Of a DNA stretch of 54,308 bases, positions 13,070-51,186 are shown one piece after another. The translations under genes and the position numbers were made by a program. This stretch comes from Basidiobolus meristosporus CBS 931.73 (Eukaryota > Fungi > Basidiobolomycota): the NCBI GenBank assembly GCA_002104905.1, contig MCFE01000602.1, forward strand, positions 1-54,308, given 5' to 3'. The first letter of the stretch is position 1. Each line of letters starts with the position of its first letter. Below the pieces are notes generated by a model, which saw only the letters and a list, made by a program, of their open reading frames with translations, did not search any database and had not been told where the DNA came from.

Positions 13070-14326
13070 ATGCTTGATGGTTTGCTTGGATTGTCATATA
13101 AATTATCGAGACGCCCATCCTTACTGTTAATCTCCATACTCTTTCTCTCTCCCAGGCCGCAAACGACCATGTGTGACGCCAAAAAAGCAAGTTTCGAGCC
13201 CTACACTCGGTACATGGACCCCAACGTGGTTGAAATGCTAGCCAAACGCCAACGCCATCTGGTTCCAAACGACTACATCACTCGCATAAAGAAAGCGGCC
13301 AACAATTGCTTGAAGAATGGACCGTTCTCCGTCACTTACACAGACAGGATACCGCCAAGTGGCGATGTCCATGACTTCATGACACAAGCGCCGTACTGGT
13401 GGCCAGACTCCAACGCCGAGAATCCCGCCACTGCGCCCTATATACGTATCGACGGGAAGATGAACCCAGAGTGTACGGAATTACCGAACCAAAAACAACT
13501 GGAGAACATGGCGCTATGTGTGAGCACTTTATCGCTCGCATACTGCTATGTTGAGGATAGCCGATATCTCAAGCATGCTTGGGACCTTCTCCGCGTCTGG
13601 TTTTTGGATCCACAAACTAGAATGAACCCAAATGTAAATTATGGCCAGATCAGACCGAACTGCTCTGAAGGCGGCACCTTTACTGGAATGATGGGTACCC
13701 GCGGTTTGGTCTTGGTGGCGAACTCCGTGTTGTTGATCAAAACGGCAGAGTACGAGGCCGACATGGTGCAGCTCAAACAATGGTTCACCGAATACGTTAA
13801 CTGGATCTCCGAGTCGGAACTGGCACTGCGTGCCAAACGTGCTCGGAACAACCACGGGACATTCTACTACATTCAGCTAGTATCTTGTTTGTATTTCCTG
13901 GAGCGTTACCAAGAGGCCCTGGATCATCTGAAGGAGTTTTTCCAACAAACGATGAAGCGTCAAATCAATCAAGAGGGGGATCAACCGCACGAGTCTGCAC
14001 GCGCAACCCCCATGACATATCTAGTGGGGAATCTTGAGGGATTGATCTACCTAGCGCAGATTGGGGACTCTCTAGGGTTTGATGGTTGGGGATTCCACAA
14101 TCAAGGGATCAAAAGAGCCGCCGACTTTATCCTGGAGAAACGGTGCTGTTGGAAGTACGAGCCCCGGCTGGGCATGATCGTGAGAACCATGATTCACAAG
14201 TACGGGGACCAGGATGGCAAATACTCGCAATTTCTTGAGGGGGAAGACCTTGGCAGTGCCAACAACCTGCGTGCAGCAGGTATGTCCTGCCTTTGGACCC
14301 TCCCACAGAGTGTCAGGCCCGCATAA
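13070..14326 (+). CDS. Alginate-lyase family (PF05426-type, PL5/PL38-like) polysaccharide lyase; alternative start at 13169
   Basis: PPSGDVHDFMTQAPYWWPD, PYIRIDGKMNPE, WFLDPQTRMNPNVNYGQ, the catalytic-type NNHG motif and QPHESAR. Intronless 418-aa ORF. Confidence 0.9.
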   Translation: MLDGLLGLSYKLSRRPSLLLISILFLSPRPQTTMCDAKKASFEPYTRYMDPNVVEMLAKRQRHLVPNDYITRIKKAANNCLKNGPFSVTYTDRIPPSGDVHDFMTQAPYWWPDSNAENPATAPYIRIDGKMNPECTELPNQKQLENMALCVSTLSLAYCYVEDSRYLKHAWDLLRVWFLDPQTRMNPNVNYGQIRPNCSEGGTFTGMMGTRGLVLVANSVLLIKTAEYEADMVQLKQWFTEYVNWISESELALRAKRARNNHGTFYYIQLVSCLYFLERYQEALDHLKEFFQQTMKRQINQEGDQPHESARATPMTYLVGNLEGLIYLAQIGDSLGFDGWGFHNQGIKRAADFILEKRCCWKYEPRLGMIVRTMIHKYGDQDGKYSQFLEGEDLGSANNLRAAGMSCLWTLPQSVRPA

Positions 14327-14567: not shown

Positions 14568-15341
14568 TCACCCTTCAAAGCCCTCACCACAACCCTTAAT
14601 CAGGCGTCGAAAGGTAACAGACAAACGAGTGCCTCGTTCTAGCTTCACCCCGTCCACTATATCGTATTCTCTCTCAGGAATGCCGTGTTCCCAGTCGTAG
14701 CGGGCTGTCCCCGACAAAGAGAGAACGTCGCCAGGCCTTAGATAAATATCTTTAGCTTGGACCGATTCCGGGGCCGGATGGGTACTGGCAGGCTTCAAGC
14801 TCATGATACAAGAAGATAAAAGCGAGATGATTACGATCCCATCTTCGAAACGAGCCAAGTCCACATGGCTTTTTATACCATCCCCCTTTCGATAAAGGTT
14901 AATGATGGTTTGATCGAATAGTGGCATGCGCGTACGTATCGGTTCTGGGAACAGATCGGAGATGGAGCGGAGGGAATCTATCACCCAGGTCAGAGATTCG
15001 GGCAGATCTCCGAAGCGCATCGCCTGGTTCATCTCGGGAGTCGCGAAATACTGTTCAGCTATGACTGCCTCCACCAGCTTAGTTTGTTGCGTATGGCTGA
15101 AAAGCTCCGGATAGTATACCAATCCCGGGATGTCTGGGAAGGTGATTCCCTCACTTGCATTGAACGAACCGACGACATGGTCCGGATTGAAGGTTTGGGA
15201 TTCCTCTACTTCCTCCGGGCCCGATTCTTCCCAAAATCTCTCATCCTCAACATCAGTCAATACTGTGTCCTCTGAGTCAGAGTCGGAGCCAAACATAGCC
15301 GTGTAGGCATCCTTATCCACGGTTTTACAAGCCTGAGTCAT
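14568..15341 (-). CDS. AlkB-family 2OG-Fe(II) dioxygenase
   Basis: NQAMRFG, DQTIINLYRKGDGIKSHVD (HxD), RYDWEHGI (distal His) and RLSVTFR (2OG-binding Arg). Single exon with an acidic N-terminus. Confidence 0.9.
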   Translation of the reverse strand: MTQACKTVDKDAYTAMFGSDSDSEDTVLTDVEDERFWEESGPEEVEESQTFNPDHVVGSFNASEGITFPDIPGLVYYPELFSHTQQTKLVEAVIAEQYFATPEMNQAMRFGDLPESLTWVIDSLRSISDLFPEPIRTRMPLFDQTIINLYRKGDGIKSHVDLARFEDGIVIISLLSSCIMSLKPASTHPAPESVQAKDIYLRPGDVLSLSGTARYDWEHGIPEREYDIVDGVKLERGTRLSVTFRRLIKGCGEGFEG

Positions 15342-15719
15342 CCAAGAAATACCCACTGAAATGAATGGACTTGAACAGGAATATTCACAGTAATCGCATC
15401 ATGTGTGCCAAGCAGCATCACATTTCCTTCATGGATCAGGCTGCACTCATTCCTGGGTCCCGAATGCTTCCAGTTTGAGGTATTACTGAATATCACGGAT
15501 GAGACAGATCGAAATTAGGAAATCGATTTAACCAAGATCAGCGCGGTGATACACGGCAGTGCCGTAAATGGATAGTGTCAGATAATAATAGACTCTGGCG
15601 AGTGGCTAGACTGCCTATTTTTTTCACAACTTGGATTGTTGGTTATCAGTCACCTTCCTCTGGATTTGCCCCTTGGCCCAGAATACAGTTACACCACATA
15701 TCTTGCGGAGAAGAGCGAA

Positions 15720-16614
15720 ATGCAAAAGCGGTACATTGGGTTGATTATCACTTCGGTGGCTTGCCTGATCTTTGTCCTTACCTACTTGCTGCTGATCGAA
15801 CCTTCCCCCGATGTTTCTACCGTAGCGGTTTATGAGGTGAGGGCGGAAGAGATCGCCATTGTCATGTCTCACGACGAGAACATGCCGTTCTACGTTCCCA
15901 GGGGAGTAGAGAACAAGAGGGAGTATGCCCAGCGTCACGGATACCAGTTCTTTTTGCAAAGGAACCATAGCGCCGACATACATGAGGTTAGCAGGAGCTT
16001 TGTTGGGCTTCACTTTGTTGGACTTCTGAGTAACGCTTTCTTTCACCCCCGTAACTGTTTAGTCCTGGAGCAAAATAACTTTCACTAGGAAGCTCATGGA
16101 GGAAAACCCCCAGATCAAGTGGTTCTGGTGGATCGACCTTGATAGCATCATCATGGACCCACGCATTTCTCTCGAAAAACTTGCTCTGAATTCGAAAAAG
16201 ATTGCTGCATACAAGTCCAAGGACATCGTCATTTCCTGGGATTGTAACGGGCTTAACACGGGCAGCTTCTTCGTGCGCAACAGCCTGTGGGCCCGAGATT
16301 TCCTAGACACCATGATCGAATATTCCGCGGCCGATCGTGGAATGTACGGAGAGCAGAGGGTGATGCAAAGACTTTGTCGTAAAGACCAGGCCATCATGAG
16401 CCATTTCAGCTTCCCACCACTTCGTACTTTCGCAGCCTCCCTCTCACACAAATGTGATCTGGATTACGAGGCCGACAGCGTTTACAAATACCGATCGGGT
16501 GATTTCCTTGTCCACTTCGCCAACTGCGGGCCCAACGATTGCCATGAAGATTTCGAGGCACTTTGGAAGAGACGCGTGGTGCTACCTGCACCGGCAATGA
16601 ACAACGTCGCATAA
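15720..16614 (+). CDS. Glycosyltransferase family 34 (Mnn10/Gma12-like), type II membrane protein, 2 exons
   Basis: N-terminal TM segment, NKREYAQRHGY, SWSKI, WFWWIDLDSIIMD (DxD), DCNGLNTGSFFVRN, EQRVM and GDFLVHFANC. Confidence 0.92.
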
Positions 16615-17579: not shown

Positions 17580-20500
17580 ATGATTTCGGTCCCTCAAGAG
17601 ACCGTGATTAAATTCAAGGGCTTATCCTGTGCTTCTTGCTCTGCAAATGTTGCCAAGGCACTCAGGAAACTCCCAGGGGTCCGCTCCGAAACGCTGACCT
17701 TCTCTTTGCTAACCGAAGCAAGGCTGGAGCATAAACATAACCTGCAGACGGCTCACATAAAATCGGTGGTCGAGCGGAACGGCTTCGAGATCCTTGATAT
17801 AACAAATAACCTATCGGATACTTCCCTTAACCTGAGCACCGAGGATCTTGGCCAATCCCGGACTGCTGCCATCATGGAGGTTCCAACAAGCCTAATGGAG
17901 AAGCCATCGAATGATTTACGCTCTGTAGTATCTACTGAACAAGGAGAGACAATAACTAGAATCGAGGTGCGGGGAATGAACTGCTCCATATGCATGGATG
18001 GAGTTCAGACTGAATTGACCGAGCTAGAGGGAGTAGAGTCGGTCAGTATTAACGTGATTTCGGGCACTACTACGGTCATTCACAAGGACGGGGACACTTC
18101 CGCCCGCGAGATTATAGAGGCGATCAAAGAGCTCGGCTACGACGCCAGCTCCCGATGTGACGAAGACAAGAAGTTGCTTTGGATGCAGGTGGAGCAGGAG
18201 AAGCGTGACGCCCGAAAGAGGTTTCTTGTCTCGCTGGCATTCGCCGTACCAACCTTCATCCTATCCACCGTCATTATGATCTTCTTGCCAAAGGATAACG
18301 ATGCCAGGCTCTTCTTTGCGTCGGAGATATTGCACGGCCTCAGCTTCTATAACTTCTTTATGATCCTATTGACCACGGCCTTTTTGATGGTAGTCAGCGC
18401 CCCCTTCTATGGAAGAGCCTATGATTCGATTCGGTTCTCCACAGCAGCCGATGTCGACGTGCTTATTGCTGTGGGGGCCACCACCACCTACTTGATCTCG
18501 CTTATTAACATCGTGGCCAGGATGGTTGACAAACGCTCGAAGGGAGAGCCCTTGGAGTTGTTTGCAGTCACCATTCTGCTGATTACATTTGTGTTGCTAG
18601 GAGAGTACATCGAGGTCATCACAAAGAGAAAGACCCTGAGCGCGATGAGCAAGTTGCTGGAGCTCCAGCCCGACAAAGCCATTCTGGTTGTTGAGAGGAC
18701 TGACGACGAAGGAAACATCAGTACGTTGGAAACGGAGGTTGAGCAAGCGATCATCACTGGTATGGTTTGAGCGATCATCTGCATGTTACATGAGCGACTA
18801 TTCACTTTCTGTTGAAGCGGGCGATATACTCCGAGTCAATCCTGGAGCCAGGATCCCTTGCGACGGTAAACCACCTCTGACTAATATGCAGCAATTGTCG
18901 ATCATGCTAACACTCCAGGCGTTTAGGGCACATCGTCAAGGGAGCAACGAGCATAGACGAGTCGATTCTCACCGGAGAGCTTGCGCCAGTGGTGAAAGGT
19001 GAAGGCGACATGGTAATTGCAGCCACGCTGAACTTGACCGCCTCTATCATGGTCAAGGCAGAGAAAATTGGTGCCGAAACCACTCTGTCTAAGATGGTCC
19101 AGCAGATCCGTGAGGCAAGCTCCTCCCCAGCACCCATCCAGAATATCGTCAACCGGATTACCAGCATCTTCGTTCCAACGGTGGTCGTGGTTGCGGTCAT
19201 GGACTTCTTTGTTTGGTTCATCCTCGGCCTGTTGAAGAAAATCCCCGACACATGGATCCCCGAAGGAGAGACGTTTGCGATGTTCGCGCTCTCGTTTGCT
19301 ATTTCCATCTTGGTGATCGGCTGCCCTTGCGCTCTGACCTTGGCCAGCTCGTCCTCCGTAATGATCGGCACAGGCATGGCTGCCAAGTACGGTGTATTTC
19401 TCAAGAACGGCGGTGCTACCCTGGAGCTGTCTAACCAGATTGATGTCGTGGCCTTCGACAAAACCGGCACCTTGACTTACGGGAAGCCATCTGTGAGTGA
19501 CTTCAGGCTTCTGTTAAAGAATGTCGGCGATTCAACGGGCCCCAGTCGAATCTTTGCTCTGGAAAATATGGTTTGGGGCATCCTGAGCAAGGTAGAGGCC
19601 GGAAGCGACCATCCGTTGGCGCAGGCGATCGTCAAGCACGCGATAAACGTCTTGAATCACTCGTCTCATTCTCGCGGAACTCATATGCCAGACATTGAGG
19701 TGGAGGAGGTGTCTGAAGTTCCAGGGAGAGGCCTCCAGGCCACCGTCAGCTTATCAACAGCAGTGTACTTGCCGTTTGCCATCAACAAGACATCCAAGTT
19801 ATCTGTGTTCATTGGAAATGAGGCTTGGTTGGCGCAGAATAATTGCAAATACTCATCCCTTTCACACGCGGCTGTGGCTCGTGCTGCCTCCCAATCGTGG
19901 CAACAAAACGGCAAGTCGGTGGTCATGGTCGGCATTGGGAATTCTTTCGATGAGGATGGGGCCACCATACTAGCTCTGATTGCTGTCGTAGACACCATAC
20001 GCCCAGAGGCCAAGCAAGTTGTTTCTGAGCTCCAATCTCGAGGAATTGATGTGTGGATGATCACGGGGGATAACCAAGTTACCGGAAAGGCAGTTGCTGA
20101 CAAGGTCGGCATCAAGAATGTGATCGCAAAGGTTCTGCCTCACGAAAAAGCCGAGAAAATAAGATGGCTTCAGTCAAGGGGTAAGGGCTTCAAAGAATCG
20201 ACCAGCGCTAGCAAGCTTCGATTTCCATCCGTTCAAGGCGATGCTCTCGGAGAAGTTCACAGAGCCATAGTAGCTATGGTGGGAGGTTTGTTGGCCGCTT
20301 CCAAAACATTTGACCTCGAATCGGCATTGATGGGCTGACATTATAGATGGTTTGAACGATTCTGCAGCATTGTCCCAAGCGGATGTTGGGTAAGAACCTT
20401 CTTCCCTGCCCTTTGTATTGGCTTTTCGGGTCGCTAACCTATATCGTAGTATTGCCATTGGGAGCGGAACTGACATCGCCATGGACAGCGCTGATGTGAT

Positions 20501-20792
20501 TCTCCTTCGCTCGCAACTACAAGATCTACTAACACTACTTGCCCTGTCCAGGTTGGTCATCAATCGTATACGAATCAATATCTTCCTGGCCATTGTGTAC
20601 AACATCTTGGCCATTCCAATTGCCGGAGGGCTGCTGTTTCCTTGGGTGGGTATCAGCTTCCCGCCAGTACTGGCCATTCTCCTGTTGTGCATCTCAACGC
20701 TGAGTGTCTTGATTTCAAGCGGGCTGCTGAAGCTCTTCAAGCCACCAAGGATCATCGTCGAGATGGACCAGAAGGAAGCCAGTAAGAAATAA
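17580..20792 (+). CDS. Heavy-metal P1B-type ATPase of the Cu(I) CCC2/ATP7 type with non-canonical transmembrane ligands, multi-exon
   Basis: Two HMA domains (GLSCASC, GMNCSIC), TGE, CPC, DKTGT, HP, MITGDN, GDGLND (split by an intron) and YN. Confidence 0.92.
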
Positions 20793-37234: not shown

Positions 37235-40200
37235 TTAGGTATCCTCGTGGTTGGTCTTCCGTCTAGTAGTGGGTGTTTCTTGCACAACGCGCTTGGTAAA
37301 CGCCTCCGTTTTCTTGAACGCTTGGATTTCCTGTTCAACCTGGTCCCTCATTTCCATGGCCATGTTGTAAACCTCGGAATCAGTTTTGTTGTACATGAGC
37401 GCGTTTTGGAACATCAGTAATATGTCGCGATGAAACTCGTCGGTGGTTGTGATGACTCCCTCTCGGATCCGCTGTTTGATCGATTTCAGGTCCATCGGCC
37501 GCTTGATAACATCATAATATCCTGGGGCAGCTTGCTCTTTGATCGGGTGCATGAACACTGCGCCGAACCGATGATTCGCGATTTCTCTCCAAATCATGGA
37601 GATCAGCTTCTTCCAGCTCTTGTGCTTTTTGTCTTCAGTAGAGGGCGAGGACGCCTCTTTCTTCTCAAAGTAAGCCCCACTATCCGATGTTTCCGCGTCA
37701 GATACTTCGTATCCATCATTTTCATCCTCCGACTCATCTTTTTTACGCTTTCCTATACTGAATTTACGCCCTTGTCTCACTGGGGTGTTTTTGTTGGATT
37801 CATCGTCTTCAAGTTTGGCCTTCTTTTCCGTTGACCCATCTGAGGCCTCTTCAAGAGATTGCTTTTGATCTGATTCTCGAGCCCGTTTGCGGGAATTCTC
37901 AAAGGGCTTGTGTGGTGGCGGAGATATGGACTTGGCATCCTTTGCACTGGCGCTGGGGATCAAAGTAGTCTCTTCAGAAATCTCTTGCTTTATGTCGGGC
38001 TCACTCAAAATCGGATTCTCCTGAAGAGCTTCAATTTTTACTTGGGGATCATCTTGCACATTTCCCTCTGATTTGGGGCTCTCTTCCGGCTGAGGTGTAG
38101 GTGACTGACCGGGGAATGAATCGCCCACACACTTCTTCGAGCTTACTCCGGTATCAGGAAACTCCTTGTTGGAGGACGAGTTGGTGATGTGGTCATCAAT
38201 CATCTCAGTATCCATCTCCTTACAATTTTTATCTTCTGAGGGGGGGCGTTCAGTCGATTCAGGATGTGTATTCAATTCACCTATGTGGATTGGCTCTTCG
38301 GTTTTCTGTTGGTGTAGATATTCATCCAAATTGGTCGAATCCGATGTTGCTTCCGGTGAGTTGGTTCGGCCAGAATTATTCTTTACCTCTAACTCTGCAG
38401 CCCCGTCGGCTTCGTTGATGTCATGAGACTCGCCATTACTGCACTCGTGAATATCTCTATCTTCATTTGTCGAGTTGTCATGGTCAGGAGAAGGGGCACC
38501 CACATTGAATGCACTGTGCATTTCCTGTGCTTCGTCCCCTGGAGTCAGAGGGTCAACTGCAGTTACAGCTGGTGTATCCTCATTTTGGGCAGGATTGCCA
38601 CGAAGAGATGCAACAGGAAGATCCCCATTGTCAGCCATAGCATCTAACGGGCTAGGCGGTGTGCTCCGTTCATAGTCATTTGTGGAAATATTGGGAAATT
38701 CGTCTTGAGATTCTGACTGAGAGATGCCCTCATCCTCCATATCTTTGACTTCATTACTGCCGCCACTTGGATTGTTCACCGCCTCAAGAGATGAATCACC
38801 TTCGTGGCCCGGACGCTCCATATTAGCCGCATCAACTCCAGATTCGTCAGGATTACTGCATTCCGTTTCGGAAATTAGAGTTCTTTCTTCTGGCTGATAT
38901 ATGGGAGTGGTAATGACCCGGGATTCAATGGGATCTTCAGCTGGCGTCTCGTCCATCTCGAGTGCATGGTTGGATAAGTCCTCCTCATCGACTATATCTT
39001 TGGCGATACTAATAATTGGCGATGAACCGCTCGAGTTCTCTTCTACCTCATCAGCAATCGGGGGTTCTAGGTCAGTTTGACCGGAATCATCCTTTCCATC
39101 CTCTAAGGGATTATCGCTAGCTGCAGACTCTAAGGCACCTCGGGATCCTAAATTCTCGCCTTCGTTTAAGGATTCGTTCGACGATTTTGCTGTGGATGGT
39201 GAGTCTGGCAAGGATGGCATATCAGAAGCAATTTGTTGAGCCGATTCTATCTGATCCATCATTGGTAATTCGTCTGTTGACTCCTCAACTTCGTGAGTTT
39301 TGGACAGATCACTGATATGGCTTTCTCCTGATCTTTCTGTTGACAACGAAAAATGCTCATTCTTACCAGGCTCATGAAGCAGTGTACTGTCAAATGAATC
39401 CGTTGCAACTTCATTTTTAACCAAAGATTCAGACTTTGGGACAGTATCCATCCGGTTGATTGGAACACCATCGTTGGTGGAGGTGTTTTGGTCAATTGGA
39501 ATTCTGCTTTCGGTCAGTGTGATCTTCTCGTCAGAAGACACATCAGCCAAAGGTAAATCGGTCTCTCGGTCTAAGGAGGCACCAGTGGGTATACTTTCAG
39601 ATATTGACGTCTCGTTAGATGCTTGCGGGTGAGAACCGGCTAGTTTAGAATCCAATTGTGTGACTTGAGTGGATTGCCCTTTCGCGTCTGCAGGAGTCAC
39701 AATATTAGGCGCGTCGCAAGGGGTCAGAGTTCCTCCCAATGCCTGATTCAATTTCTCCATCTCGACTGGCTCGTCAACTTGGACAGTGGACATGTCAGCG
39801 GACCCGGGAGCATCATCAATCAACATCTGATCTGACGATTGTTCTTCACGTGTTTGTTTTTCGTGATCACCTTCCTGGTTGGTGCTGTCATGAATGGTAT
39901 CCAATTTGGTGTCGATGCTGCTCCCTTTTTCAACCGCCTTAATAACTGTGGCCTCTACATCCATATCCATGCTATCATTACCAACCAACTCCTCTGTTAC
40001 CGCATCTTCACCCATTTGGGGTCTAGCAGATTCGACATTTGCCTGTTCCTCTCTTGATGCCTTTTCAAGTTCATTGGATGTGTGCGTACCCTGAGCATTG
40101 GCCGAAGTGTCTAATGCTGAGCTTACGAATTCAGGTTTTGCATGATCGGCCTCCAGCTCTTCCACAAAAAATTTGTTTGATACTTTGGTAGCCTCTTCTG

Positions 40201-41335
40201 GTGGCACACTCGATTCGACGCTTTGATCCTGTACACCTGTACTACCATCTTGTGTAATATTAATTCGGGTCGAAATACTCGATTCCCTCACTGGCACCGC
40301 CTCGCTCACTCCTTCATCCATAGCAACATCCGTGTCATCTTCCAAGTCTGATGCTTTAACCGGTTTAAGAGAGCCAGGTTCTGATCCCGAGGAGGATTGC
40401 GTCTTTAATTCCTTTTCGTCTGGTTTATTTCCCACTTCGTCGGATGGGAAGGCTTTGTCGGTATCTAGCCCTTGTGAAGGCGTCGTAATAGAAGTAGTTT
40501 TCGTCACTTGGGGAGATACGGCGGCTTGAGGTGACTTATGGTTTGGCCCATCTGAAGAATGAACCTCTTGAACAATGGATGATGTAACCAGCGAATGATT
40601 TGGAGGCGCTGGGTGCTCGTTTTGACTGGGTTGCTGTGGAGTAGCACTAAGATTCCTATTGAATCCTTTGTATTTCTCCAATAACTTCCTATCCCATTTT
40701 CCTGTTTGAATCTCCTCAACCTCCTTTTTAAGAACACTGTATTGATTGGCATGAATTTCAGCTCATAGCGAAAGAAAGTAAGCACACTTACCGATACTTT
40801 TCCACGTCAACCTTGAGTGCAAGCTTAAGTTCTTGGATCCGCTCCATGTATAATTCTCTGGCCAGTTTTAACACGGGGGGCATCTCTATATTGACATCTA
40901 GGCTGCCATAAGAGTCTATAAAAGTAGATCCTTACAAAAGAGTTGCTGATTTACCTGGTGTCGTAAATGTAAGCTGTTTTCTGTTTGGGAAAATGTACCA
41001 CTTAGTTGCGATCAACGAAGGTAAGGCAATCCAAATCTTACCTTTTGTCCTCCAAGTCTTTTATGAGAGAGGCATATTGAAGAGCACAACTCTATTTGGA
41101 GTCAAAAACGTGAAAAATCAATGAGATGCAGACCTACTACATACAGGAAGAGAGAAAATACGGAATCCCACTTTACATTTTGGGTAAAGAAATCGTCAGA
41201 TCGGGTTGCCGAACGATGATGGTTCAACGTTCTCGCGATGGCCAACCAGTTGCCATCGCCATATTTATACACGGATTGGGCCAGCAATAGTTTCTCTAAA
41301 ACGGTCCAATTTGAATTTGCTTTTAAACCGTCCAT
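37235..41335 (-). CDS. BRD8: BRD8/Bdc1-like NuA4-associated bromodomain protein, multi-exon
   Basis: N-terminal SANT-like WTVLEKLLLAQSVYKYGDGNWLAIAR and C-terminal bromodomain WKKLISMIWREIANHRFGAVFMHPI...PGYYDVIKRPMDL...FQNALMYN both match BRD8 motifs. Confidence 0.88.
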
Positions 41336-49560: not shown

Positions 49561-51186
49561 TCATTGCTTAATAGTTATGCGACCATCAATAAGTGGAGTA
49601 ATGGTTCCCTTCTCTTTGATGTACTCGGTCAAACTTGCGTCGAATGTTTCCAGCTGGACGGGGTTTGCAGAAGGCACCGGCAAAATATTATCCCCACCGC
49701 TGACGACAAAATCTAAGGTAACAAAGCGATATACAGCATCAGGTTCGAGAGGCTCGAAGGCGGTCTTGTCTTTGGTGGCAACCTCTACTCCGCTAACTCT
49801 GGATCCTGCTGGAGCATTGGTGTCGATAGTAAATTTCATCCCGGACACTTGGATAAAGCTGGTCACTGGTTTGTCAAAAACCGAGTTAAAGCGACTAGCG
49901 ACTCCCTCCAACATGGTAAGAATTTCTTTCCCAGATAAGCTCATATCGGAAAGTGCGTTTCCAAATGGGGCAATTGTTAACACATCACGTACTTTGACAT
50001 CTCCAACATCAATACCCGCTCTAATTCCCCCAGAATTGATAAGGGCAAAGCGAACATCTTCGGACTCGCGGCGAGACCAGAGCATCGCGTCAGTGACCAA
50101 GTTTCCCGCAGTACATTCTTGGGTTTGGCAGGTGGCTTGATCAAATGATTCAGTGGCCTTTCCAATAACTACCTCCGCGAATTCATCGAAGGGCTTGCGC
50201 CACTGTTTCACAAGACGTTCGGTGCATCTATCTTTCGGGATCTTATGGTCAATGTAAATCGGTTCTCCACCGATGGCAGCAACTTTTCCTGATTTGTCAT
50301 AGTAGAGATTTACATGTCCAACGTATCTTCCCCAAGCCCAAGCTTGTACAACATATGTGTTCTCGTTCGCCAGATTCTTTACCGTGGTAGTGTAGGGTCC
50401 TTTAGATTGCAGATAATTTGGATCATTCCATGTGCTTGAGAGGTAGGTGTGACTGTGACCACCAACAATCAGATCAATCCCTTTAGTACGCCTAGCAAGA
50501 TCAATATCTTCTTGATAACCATTGTGACTAACGCAAATGATCTTTTTGATGCCTTTTCCACGCAGTTCATCAACATACTTCTGAACAGATATCGCTGGGT
50601 CGAAAAATGTGATGTTTGCAGCCTTGGGTGCAATGGATGCAGTAGTATTGGTAACATATCCAATGACACCCAAACTCTTCTTGGGGAAGATGTGATATGG
50701 CCTGATGGCCTCATTGAAAGCTTTCTCCTTATGAGCATCGATGTTCGAGCTTACTACCGGGAAATTGACCTGATGGATGAAATTGGCCAAGTGGTCTGGC
50801 CCATCATCGAATTCATGGTTGCCAACAGTCATCAGATCATACTTGAGCCGATTCATGATGTCGGCTGTCACATTGCCTTTGTAGAAGGTGTAGAATAAAG
50901 TTCCTTGGAATTGGTCACCAGCATCAAACAGGTAAAGATCCCGATATCTCTTGCGTAGACGGTCAATTACGGTCTTGATACGCGCGACTCCTCCCATGCA
51001 CAGCTTGTTCTCAATTTGTTCAGGGGTACAGTCGGTTCCGTACTTGTTGAATTCGTCAAGATGTGCATGGATATCATTGGTATGAACAATGGTGACTCGT
51101 TCCAAATTTTCTCGACGAAGCAGGGTAGCGGAGGCTGTTCCAACAAACAGAGAATAGACGGAAATCAGCAAGGCCCAATTTTTCAT
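49561..51186 (-). CDS. Secreted 5'-nucleotidase/apyrase (calcineurin-like metallophosphoesterase + 5'-nucleotidase C-terminal domain)
   Basis: Signal peptide, HTNDIH, DAGDQFQG, GNHEFD, SHNG, GGHSH, NSGGIR, PFGN and QVSG. Intronless 541 aa, no hydrophobic GPI tail. Confidence 0.95.
   Translation of the reverse strand: MKNWALLISVYSLFVGTASATLLRRENLERVTIVHTNDIHAHLDEFNKYGTDCTPEQIENKLCMGGVARIKTVIDRLRKRYRDLYLFDAGDQFQGTLFYTFYKGNVTADIMNRLKYDLMTVGNHEFDDGPDHLANFIHQVNFPVVSSNIDAHKEKAFNEAIRPYHIFPKKSLGVIGYVTNTTASIAPKAANITFFDPAISVQKYVDELRGKGIKKIICVSHNGYQEDIDLARRTKGIDLIVGGHSHTYLSSTWNDPNYLQSKGPYTTTVKNLANENTYVVQAWAWGRYVGHVNLYYDKSGKVAAIGGEPIYIDHKIPKDRCTERLVKQWRKPFDEFAEVVIGKATESFDQATCQTQECTAGNLVTDAMLWSRRESEDVRFALINSGGIRAGIDVGDVKVRDVLTIAPFGNALSDMSLSGKEILTMLEGVASRFNSVFDKPVTSFIQVSGMKFTIDTNAPAGSRVSGVEVATKDKTAFEPLEPDAVYRFVTLDFVVSGGDNILPVPSANPVQLETFDASLTEYIKEKGTITPLIDGRITIKQ

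What the first reader, a model, noticed from the sequence alone, without database searches (positions are those of the whole stretch)
17580..20792. Cu-type P1B ATPase with intact motor but rewired metal entry, binding and exit residues
Seen: DKTGT, TGE, HP, TGDN, GDGxND, CPC and YN are all intact. However, the entry Met of N-M-D-x-L is Val (DVDVL), the entry Asp of APIQxxAD is Asn (APIQNIVN), the exit Glu of FE/DT is Ala (LFAVT), and the last-helix MxxSS is LCIST. Known: in L. pneumophila CopA these positions correspond to Met148, Asp337, Glu189 and Met717/Ser721, which are near-invariant in Cu(I) pumps. Inference: four coordinated losses without damage to the catalytic core suggest a paralogue with changed substrate or a regulatory role rather than random decay. 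A new Cys lies next to the lost Met.
Basis: partly seen in the sequence, partly recalled or inferred. Interest (0 to 1): 0.7.

Follow-up and report, generated by a model that had tools for sequence, protein, structure and literature searches.

The report
Copper pump paralogue with rewired channel
This fungal gene encodes an intact copper-pump-type ATPase that has lost four almost universally conserved residues lining the metal path. A fly-killing fungus carries a relative with the same changes, so this looks like an old, maintained, undescribed variant rather than a dying gene.

Summary
Window 17580-20792 (+) is a clean 5-exon gene with four GT..AG introns of 58-61 nt, encoding a 990-aa P1B-1 (Ccc2/ATP7-type) ATPase. 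It has two CxxC HMA domains and intact TGE, CPC, DKTGT, HP, TGDN, GDGLND and YN.

In about 440-500 relatives fetched here:
- The M1 Met is invariant (441/441); here it is Val292.
- The M2 Glu/Asp is 443/449; here Ala329.
- The M3 Asp is 489/496; here Asn485.
- The M6 Met is 458/462; here Leu956. Cys957 and Thr960 are each seen in no other sequence.
- A Pro after CPC (498/500) is Ser551.

Deviations at conserved columns are enriched in membrane helices (10/44 against 4/65, p=0.013). The overall branch length is ordinary.

The only relative that shares the changes is a duplicated Entomophthora muscae gene, with the same Val, Asn and Leu and no M2 acid. It groups with the window protein (SH-aLRT 83-95). 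It has further lost TGE and the first CPC Cys. Its two copies still differ by 20 synonymous against 7 non-synonymous changes, which indicates purifying selection.

I read the window gene as an old, selectively maintained, diverged paralogue with a working motor and a remodelled ion path. Substrate and role are untested. No RNA data were available, and the joined protein could not be folded.

The parts
17580..18759 (+). Exon 1. Contains HMA1 (CASC), HMA2 (CSIC), helices MA, MB, M1 (AADVDVL, Val292) and M2 (LFAVT, Ala329; GEYIE, Glu345 kept), and the start of the A domain.
   Evidence: Pfam HMA x2 (2.8e-16). phmmer alignment to ATP7B 7xuk and OsHMA4 8q73.
18760..18817 (+). Intron 1, 58 nt, GTATGG..AAG.
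   Evidence: The same position is an intron in E. muscae L002 and in Diversispora P0121.
18818..18865 (+). Exon 2, a 48-nt mini-exon encoding (A)GDILRVNPGARIPCD(G).
   Evidence: The same mini-exon is found in Diversispora epigaea and E. muscae.
18866..18926 (+). Intron 2, 61 nt, GTAAAC..TAG, with a CTAAC branch site.
18927..20285 (+). Exon 3. Contains TGE, M3 (APIQNIVN, Asn485), M4 (CPC 542-544, then ALTLASSSS with Ser551), DKTGT, the N domain (SDHPLA), TGDN, and the start of GDGLND.
   Evidence: E1-E2_ATPase 1e-32, Hydrolase 2e-22, TIGR01525 4.7e-93. Best solved relatives are OsHMA4 and ATP7B.
20286..20346 (+). Intron 3, 61 nt, GTTTGT..TAG. It splits the Asp codon of GDGLND.
20347..20389 (+). 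Exon 4, a 43-nt mini-exon encoding (D)GLNDSAALSQADV(G).
20390..20449 (+). Intron 4, 60 nt, GTAAGA..TAG, with a CTAAC branch site.
20450..20792 (+). Exon 5. Contains the end of the P domain, M5 (IVYNILAIP, YN kept), M6 (LLLCISTLSV: Leu956, Cys957, Ser959, Thr960), a short tail and the stop codon.
   Evidence: TIGR01511 Cu-ATPase 5e-24. Alignment to OsHMA4 and AfCopA.

Best explanation
The gene encodes a functional, selectively maintained, anciently diverged paralogue of the Ccc2/ATP7-type Cu(I) P1B-1 ATPase. It belongs to a lineage shared with the entomophthoralean fungus Entomophthora muscae.

Shown:
- The ATP-driven phosphorylation and dephosphorylation machinery (A, P and N domains), both CxxC metal-binding domains, the M4 CPC and the M5 YN are all kept.
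- Four conserved residues are replaced: the sulfur/carboxylate entry residues (M1 Met, M3 Asp), the M2 exit carboxylate and the M6 Met of the internal site.
- Three of these replacements are the same residues in the E. muscae homologue.

Inferred:
- The replacements were probably made in the common ancestor with E. muscae.
- The protein still cycles as a P-type ATPase and still takes a thiophilic metal, most likely Cu(I), through its HMA domains and CPC.
- Hand-over from the chaperone platform, occupancy of the second site and luminal release must work differently from canonical pumps. The likely result is a slower, differently gated or differently selective pump, possibly with Cys957 as a substitute sulfur ligand.
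- It works beside a canonical paralogue that does the housekeeping copper delivery.
For: - Intact 5-exon gene.
- Family assignment and best solved relatives.
- Near-invariance of the four positions in about 440-500 relatives. The window protein and E. muscae are the only two sequences without Met in M1.
- 14 deviations at 109 conserved columns, 10 of them in membrane helices, with all catalytic motifs kept.
- Ordinary branch length: 0.59 against a median of 0.49.
- The E. muscae homologue carries Val, non-acid, Asn and Leu at the same four positions.
- E. muscae is sister to the window protein. SH-aLRT is 95. With the M1, M3 and M6 trait columns dropped it is 91 under LG+G4 and 83 under LG+C20 PMSF.
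- An AU test rejects a clade of the window protein with the canonical Basidiobolus genes (p=0.022).
- The two E. muscae copies differ by 20 synonymous and 7 non-synonymous changes. The neutral expectation is 9 synonymous, and 0 of 20,000 simulations reached 20.
- The roles of M148/E205/D337 (entry), C382/C384/M717 (internal site) and E189 (exit) in LpCopA are as summarised in PMC11213822 and PMC13677743.
Against: - There is no expression evidence; no RNA run was listed.
- No close orthologue exists in the libraries, so no dN/dS could be computed for this gene itself.
- The sister relation to E. muscae involves a long branch (1.44-2.35), and support falls to 83 under the mixture model.
- The E. 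muscae relative has also lost TGE, the first CPC Cys and the Asp of GDGxND. The lineage may therefore be drifting away from pumping altogether.
- In canonical pumps the M6 Met and the M2 acid are described as parts of the transport path, so transport by this protein is not assured.
- Cys957 is not conserved in E. muscae.
- I could not see the rest of the genome, so the presence of a canonical paralogue in the same genome is not shown.
Confidence: 0.55

Rival explanations
1. It is an ordinary Cu(I) exporter. In this lineage the four residues are dispensable: Cu(I) goes from the HMA domains straight to CPC and is released without the M2 carboxylate. The gene may even be the lineage's main Ccc2 orthologue.
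For: - CPC, YN, Glu345 and both CxxC domains are kept.
- The gene tree places the protein where an entomophthoromycotine Ccc2 would sit: next to Basidiobolus and Kickxellomycotina, then Mucoromycota, then chytrids.
- No canonical Entomophthorales protein appeared among the 120 best relatives of the Basidiobolus canonical pump.
Against: - The M1 Met is invariant in 441 of 441 other sequences and the M6 Met in 458 of 462. That is hard to reconcile with dispensability.
- Canonical paralogues do exist in Basidiobolus (P0131, P0272, P0396).
- The E. muscae relative lost TGE and a CPC Cys, which an essential housekeeping pump would not tolerate.
Confidence: 0.17
2. It is a non-transporting 'pseudo-pump'. 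The protein binds copper on its HMA domains and perhaps at CPC. It uses ATP-dependent conformational change, or none, for sensing, regulation or scaffolding rather than for moving ions.
For: - Entry, internal-site and exit residues were all lost together.
- The E. muscae relative lacks TGE (AAE), the first CPC Cys (GPC) and the GDG Asp (GEG), yet is under purifying selection.
Against: In the window protein every catalytic motif and 95 of 109 conserved columns are preserved over a long branch. That argues for selection on a complete catalytic cycle. I know of no precedent for a regulatory P1B ATPase (own knowledge).
Confidence: 0.18
3. It is a pump with a changed substrate: another thiophilic or divalent metal such as Zn, Cd, Co, Pb or Hg, or a non-metal.
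For: The selectivity-determining M6 motif changed from MxxSS to LCxST. A possible three-Cys site (C542, C544, C957) would suit other soft metals.
Against: None of the signatures of the other P1B subgroups is present: no M5 Lys with an M6 DxG as in ZntA, and no SPC, CPH or HEGxT. NCBIfam scores are best for the Cu subfamily on the M5-M6 exon (5e-24 against 2.9e-9 for the Cd family).
Confidence: 0.07
4. It is a subtelomeric duplicate in early pseudogenisation.
For: - The gene lies about 33 kb from a telomere.
- It deviates at more conserved columns than any of the other 117 full-length sequences compared.
- It is absent from all protein libraries searched.
Against: - The reading frame is open across five exons with canonical splice sites.
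- All catalytic motifs are kept.
- The branch length is ordinary.
- The key changes are shared with a distant genus, so they are old.
Confidence: 0.03

Closest known systems
Ccc2 / ATP7A-ATP7B / plant HMA5-8 (OsHMA4, PDB 8q73; ATP7B, 7xuk and 7si3): eukaryotic P1B-1 Cu(I) ATPases
   Same: Domain order is the same: N-terminal CxxC HMA domains, eight helices MA-M6, and A, P and N domains. TGE, CPC, DKTGT, SxHP, TGDN, GDGxND and YN(x4)P are all present. These are the best PDB matches (1.5e-65).
   Different: The M1 Met, M2 Asp/Glu, M3 Asp, M6 Met and the second M6 Ser are replaced, as are the Pro and Gly after CPC. Identity to any library protein is at most 43-46%.
Legionella pneumophila CopA (3rfu, 4bbj), the structural reference for the Cu(I) path
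   Same: The residues map one to one: M148 to V292, E189 to A329, E205 to E345, D337 to N485, C382/C384 to C542/C544, M717 to L956, and S721 to T960.
   Different: Five of the eight path residues differ. LpCopA is bacterial, with one degenerate HMA domain.
Entomophthora muscae KAJ9074901.1 and KAJ9074878.1 (P0180, P0273; loci L002, L001), annotated 'hypothetical protein'
   Same: - Val in M1, no acid in M2, Val-Asn in M3 and Leu in M6.
- One extra residue after KxGG.
- Similar N-domain insert and similar C-terminal P-domain strings.
- The same two introns around the mini-exon.
- Sister to the window protein in the tree.
   Different: - Only 37% identical, on a branch 2.5 to 3 times longer.
- Additionally TGE to AAE, CPC to GPC, GDG to GEG, and the CxxC of HMA2 lost.
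- No Cys after the M6 Leu.
- The linker before MA carries a frame change and two in-frame stops, or else an unusual 113-nt intron.
- It is annotated as three separate genes.
Canonical Basidiobolus meristosporus P1B-1 genes (ORX91016.1 = P0272, ORY04433.1 = P0131)
   Same: Same fungal subphylum-level clade in the tree. Highest identity to the window protein (46% over 696 columns). Similar GC and codon usage.
   Different: All path residues are canonical (TANMDVL, FFETS, GD, LLMIGSS). They lack the introns around the mini-exon. A clade with the window protein is rejected by the AU test (p=0.022).

Membership tests
P-type ATPase superfamily | DKTGT phosphorylation motif, TGE in the A domain, and TGDN and GDGxND in the P domain. 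| tested here: met
   All are present in the spliced product. Pfam E1-E2_ATPase and Hydrolase match.
P1B (heavy-metal) ATPases | CPx motif in M4, the eight-helix MA-M6 topology, an SEHP-type N domain and N-terminal HMA domains. | tested here: met
   CPC at 542-544, SDHPLA, two HMA domains and TIGR01525 at 4.7e-93 on exon 3 alone. Topology is inferred from the alignment to solved structures, not modelled.
P1B-1 (Cu(I)/Ag(I)) subgroup | M4 CPC. | tested here: met
   C542-P543-C544.
P1B-1 (Cu(I)/Ag(I)) subgroup | M5 YN(x4)P. | tested here: met
   Y927-N928-ILAI-P933.
P1B-1 (Cu(I)/Ag(I)) subgroup | M6 MxxSS. | tested here: not met
   The motif is LCIST. Met is found in 458 of 462 relatives and the second Ser in 456 of 457.
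P1B-1 (Cu(I)/Ag(I)) subgroup | Entry-site triad: M1 Met, M2 Glu and M3 Asp (LpCopA M148, E205, D337). | tested here: not met
   Val292, Glu345 (kept) and Asn485. Met is found in 441 of 441 relatives and Asp in 489 of 496. The roles are taken from PMC11213822 and PMC13677743.
P1B-1 (Cu(I)/Ag(I)) subgroup | Exit carboxylate in M2 (LpCopA E189). | tested here: not met
   Ala329. Glu or Asp is found in 443 of 449 relatives.
P1B-1 (Cu(I)/Ag(I)) subgroup | Cu(I)-dependent ATPase activity and transport. | not testable with these tools
   Needs biochemistry or complementation.
P1B-2 (Zn/Cd/Pb, ZntA type) | M5 Lys and M6 DxG. | tested here: not met
   M5 has YN and M6 has no Asp. ZntA models score far lower.

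The most novel reading that the evidence does not exclude
Entomophthoromycotina (Basidiobolus plus Entomophthora lineages) carry an old, selectively retained clade of P1B-1-derived ATPases in which the canonical copper entry, binding and exit residues were replaced in the common ancestor. The clade has a new job: either a pump with a new coordination chemistry (Cys-rich site) or substrate, or a copper-binding pseudo-pump used for sensing. The window protein would be the member that still has a complete motor, and E. muscae the member that has given up the catalytic cycle.
Probability: 0.3. Interest if true: 0.75.

Novelty: new variant of a known kind. Interest (0 to 1): 0.55.

Why it matters
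The transmembrane copper path of P1B-1 pumps (M1 Met, M2 acid, M3 Asp, CPC, M6 Met) is treated as universal. It underlies the interpretation of Menkes and Wilson disease variants.

This protein keeps the whole motor but has replaced four of those residues. Three of the four changes recur as the same residues in a second genus, whose two gene copies are under purifying selection.

It therefore offers a ready-made experiment on which path residues are really needed for turnover, on how selectivity is set, and on how a pump can evolve into something else. It also adds a piece to copper handling in a group of animal-associated early-diverging fungi that is little studied.

Tried and rejected
- **Word-index searches.** The search with exon 3 and with a profile of exon 3 plus the E. 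muscae proteins gave no further member of the diverged group. The length filter also hides full-length relatives.
- **Exhaustive search.** The best hit with exon 3 is only 43-45% identical, so no orthologue was available for dN/dS on this gene.
- **RNA evidence.** No run was listed.
- **Exact look-ups.** Two neighbouring ORFs used to identify the assembly are not on record.
- **Shared introns as evidence of exclusive kinship with E. muscae.** Rejected, because Diversispora P0121 has the same mini-exon, so the introns are ancestral. They only show that the gene is not a recent copy of the canonical Basidiobolus gene, which lacks them.
- **Low divergence of the E. muscae gene as evidence of selection.** The gene differs by 1% and the flanks by 7-10%. 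This is not used on its own, because gene conversion could explain it. The synonymous to non-synonymous ratio is used instead.
- **Mac1-type copper-response element TTTGCKCR.** None lies upstream of the gene, and there are 4 in the window against 6.8 expected.
- **Biosynthetic or metal gene cluster around the gene.** The neighbours are an alginate lyase, an AlkB-like oxygenase, a GT34 transferase, a MICOS/ApoO-like protein, a UCH protease and an OSBP, so no cluster is apparent.
- **First tree attempt.** It timed out.
- **Column error in two trees.** In some searches I dropped column 328 instead of 329, so the M2 trait column stayed in those trees. It is one column of about 700.
- **Joined protein.** The 990-aa product has no reference. 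It was therefore not handed to any search or folding tool and was used only inside local scripts.
Full report
**Gene model.** ORF listing and three-frame translation show three long ORF pieces in different frames on the + strand. Four short GT..AG introns join them into one 2973-nt CDS:
- 18760-18817
- 18866-18926
- 20286-20346
- 20390-20449

The introns are 58-61 nt long, and two carry CTAAC branch sites. The result is five exons, including mini-exons of 48 and 43 nt. The product is 990 aa, and each junction restores a canonical P1B string (IPCDG|HIVKG..SIDESILTGE; VAMVG|DGLND..ADVG|IAIGSGTD). The joined protein was used only in local scripts.

**Family.** Pfam finds two HMA domains, E1-E2_ATPase and Hydrolase. 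NCBIfam scores best with the heavy-metal and Cu subfamily models. The best solved relatives are rice HMA4 (8q73/8q75), ATP7B (7xuk, 7si3), AfCopA and LpCopA (3rfu). TGE, CPC, DKTGT, SDHPLA, TGDN, GDGLND, YN and both CxxC motifs are present.

**Observation.**
- NMDVL becomes DVDVL (Val292).
- FFDT/FFET becomes LFAVT (Ala329).
- APxQxxAD becomes APIQNIVN (Asn485).
- MxxSS becomes LCIST (Leu956, Cys957, Thr960).

Their frequencies at these positions are:

| Position | Canonical residue in relatives | Window protein |
|---|---|---|
| M1 | Met, 441/441 | Val292 |
| M2 | Glu/Asp, 443/449 | Ala329 |
| M3 | Asp, 489/496 | Asn485 |
| M6 | Met, 458/462 | Leu956 |
| M6, second Ser | Ser, 456/457 | Thr960 |
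| After the M6 Met | Cys, 0/461 | Cys957 |

The third entry residue (LpCopA E205) is kept as Glu345. Two further near-invariant residues just after CPC are lost: Gly547Thr and Pro551Ser (Pro in 498/500). The roles of M148/E205/D337 (entry), C382/C384/M717 (internal site) and E189 (exit) are as summarised in PMC11213822 and PMC13677743.

**Pattern of change.**
- At 109 columns conserved at 90% or more, the protein deviates at 14. That is the most of 118 full-length sequences (median 3).
- 10 of the 14 lie in the 44 conserved membrane-helix columns, and 4 in the 65 soluble-domain columns (Fisher p=0.013).
- The soluble-domain changes are mostly conservative (I/M, V/I, L/F).
- The terminal branch (0.59) is close to the median (0.49). 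Its root-to-tip length matches that of canonical Basidiobolus and Kickxellomycotina genes.
- So the protein is not globally relaxed. The change is concentrated on the ion path.

**Relatives.** No library protein exceeds 43-46% identity. Named hits place the protein among early-diverging fungi: Glomeromycotina, Mucoromycotina and Mortierellomycotina in one group, Basidiobolus and Kickxellomycotina in another, and chytrids further out.

One hit stands out, Entomophthora muscae P0180/P0273. Its two loci lie on one contig, and I read them by tblastn. Its features are:
- SVDGL in M1 (Val)
- FYMPT in M2 (no acid)
- STLQDNVN in M3 (Val-Asn)
- LLLVSSS in M6 (Leu)

These are the same four positions as in the window protein, and three carry the same residue. 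The window protein and E. muscae are the only two of about 440 sequences without Met in M1. They are sisters in the trees:
- SH-aLRT 95 under LG+G4.
- SH-aLRT 91 with the M1, M3 and M6 trait columns dropped.
- SH-aLRT 83 under LG+C20 PMSF.

The E. muscae branch is long, so the placement is moderately rather than strongly supported. An AU test rejects a clade of the window protein with the canonical Basidiobolus genes (p=0.022). The two introns around the 48-nt mini-exon are shared with E. muscae, but also with Diversispora. They are therefore ancestral. The canonical Basidiobolus gene lacks them.

**The E. muscae gene.** It has gone further:
- TGE is AAE.
- CPC is GPC.
- GDGxND is GEGTND.
- HMA2 has lost its CxxC.

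The linker before MA needs either a frame change and two read-through stops or an odd 113-nt intron. This feature is identical in both copies. Yet the two copies differ by 20 synonymous and 7 non-synonymous substitutions. The neutral expectation is 9 synonymous of 27, and 0 of 20,000 simulations reached 20. The lineage is therefore kept by selection even where the classical catalytic cycle looks compromised.

**Which genome.** Notes of other agents call this genome Basidiobolus (meristosporus). I could only test consistency:
- GC is 45.7% in the window and 45.2% in a B. meristosporus contig.
- Codon usage correlates best with the Basidiobolus gene (r=0.50-0.57).
- Identity is highest to the Basidiobolus canonical pump.

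Two complete neighbouring ORFs are not on record as exact proteins, and this gene is absent from the libraries. So the window comes from another isolate or species, or from an unannotated region. If the assignment holds, canonical paralogues (P0131, P0272) exist in the same genus, and this gene is an extra, old paralogue.

**Interpretation.**
- Shown: an intact gene, an intact motor, four path residues replaced, and three of them recurring as identical residues in a second genus whose gene copies are under purifying selection.
- Inferred: the protein still runs a P-type cycle and still handles a soft metal, most likely Cu(I), through its HMA domains and CPC. It would do so with altered uptake, site occupancy and release.
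- Possible but unconserved: Cys957 lies three residues before Thr960, which corresponds to LpCopA S721. It could therefore supply a sulfur ligand.
- Rivals are an ordinary pump in which these residues are dispensable, a non-transporting pseudo-pump (favoured by the E. muscae state), a changed substrate, and early decay (disfavoured).

**Limits.**
- No RNA data were available.
- No fold of the joined protein was made.
- I had no view of the rest of the genome.
- The promoter has no Mac1-type element, and the neighbours form no obvious functional cluster.
- I found no paper on such a variant in two targeted searches. That is a thin basis for claiming absence from the literature.

Noticed in passing
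L001:4561-7686 and L002:4454-7581 (E. muscae QTSX02002844.1): Two copies of a degenerate P1B gene (TGE to AAE, CPC to GPC, GDG to GEG, HMA2 CxxC lost), annotated as two or three separate genes. The copies differ by 20 synonymous and 7 non-synonymous changes. The gene differs by about 1% while the flanks differ by 7-10%. The linker before helix MA holds a frame change and two in-frame stops shared by both copies.
   Followed up: partly
P0122 (581 aa, close to Ambispora gerdemannii P0003): Another degenerate P1B copy in Glomeromycotina: CPC is SHC and DKTGT is AKTGT.
   Followed up: no
window 18818-18865 and 20347-20389: Two mini-exons of 48 and 43 nt. The first, with both flanking introns, is conserved in Diversispora epigaea and E. 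muscae. It is absent from the canonical Basidiobolus, Coemansia and Dissophora genes. Intron 3 splits the Asp codon of GDGLND.
   Followed up: yes
window 13070-14326 (+): A 418-aa ORF with a strong alginate lyase domain (PF05426, 2e-52), an unusual enzyme for a fungus. It lies next to an AlkB-like 2OG-Fe(II) oxygenase (14568-15356, -) and a GT34 galactosyltransferase split over two ORFs (15636-16614).
   Followed up: no
same genome, another piece (note s1-219014): Another reader noted an 'intact P-type ATPase in which the conserved acidic and catalytic residues are replaced', 3211 letters long. It could be a second member of this diverged group. I could not see it.
   Followed up: no
window 49561-51186 (-) and 37235-40681 (-): A complete 541-aa 5'-nucleotidase/metallophosphoesterase ORF and an 1148-aa bromodomain ORF lie between the gene and the telomere. 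Neither the 5'-nucleotidase nor the alginate lyase product is on record as an exact protein in the public collection.
   Followed up: partly
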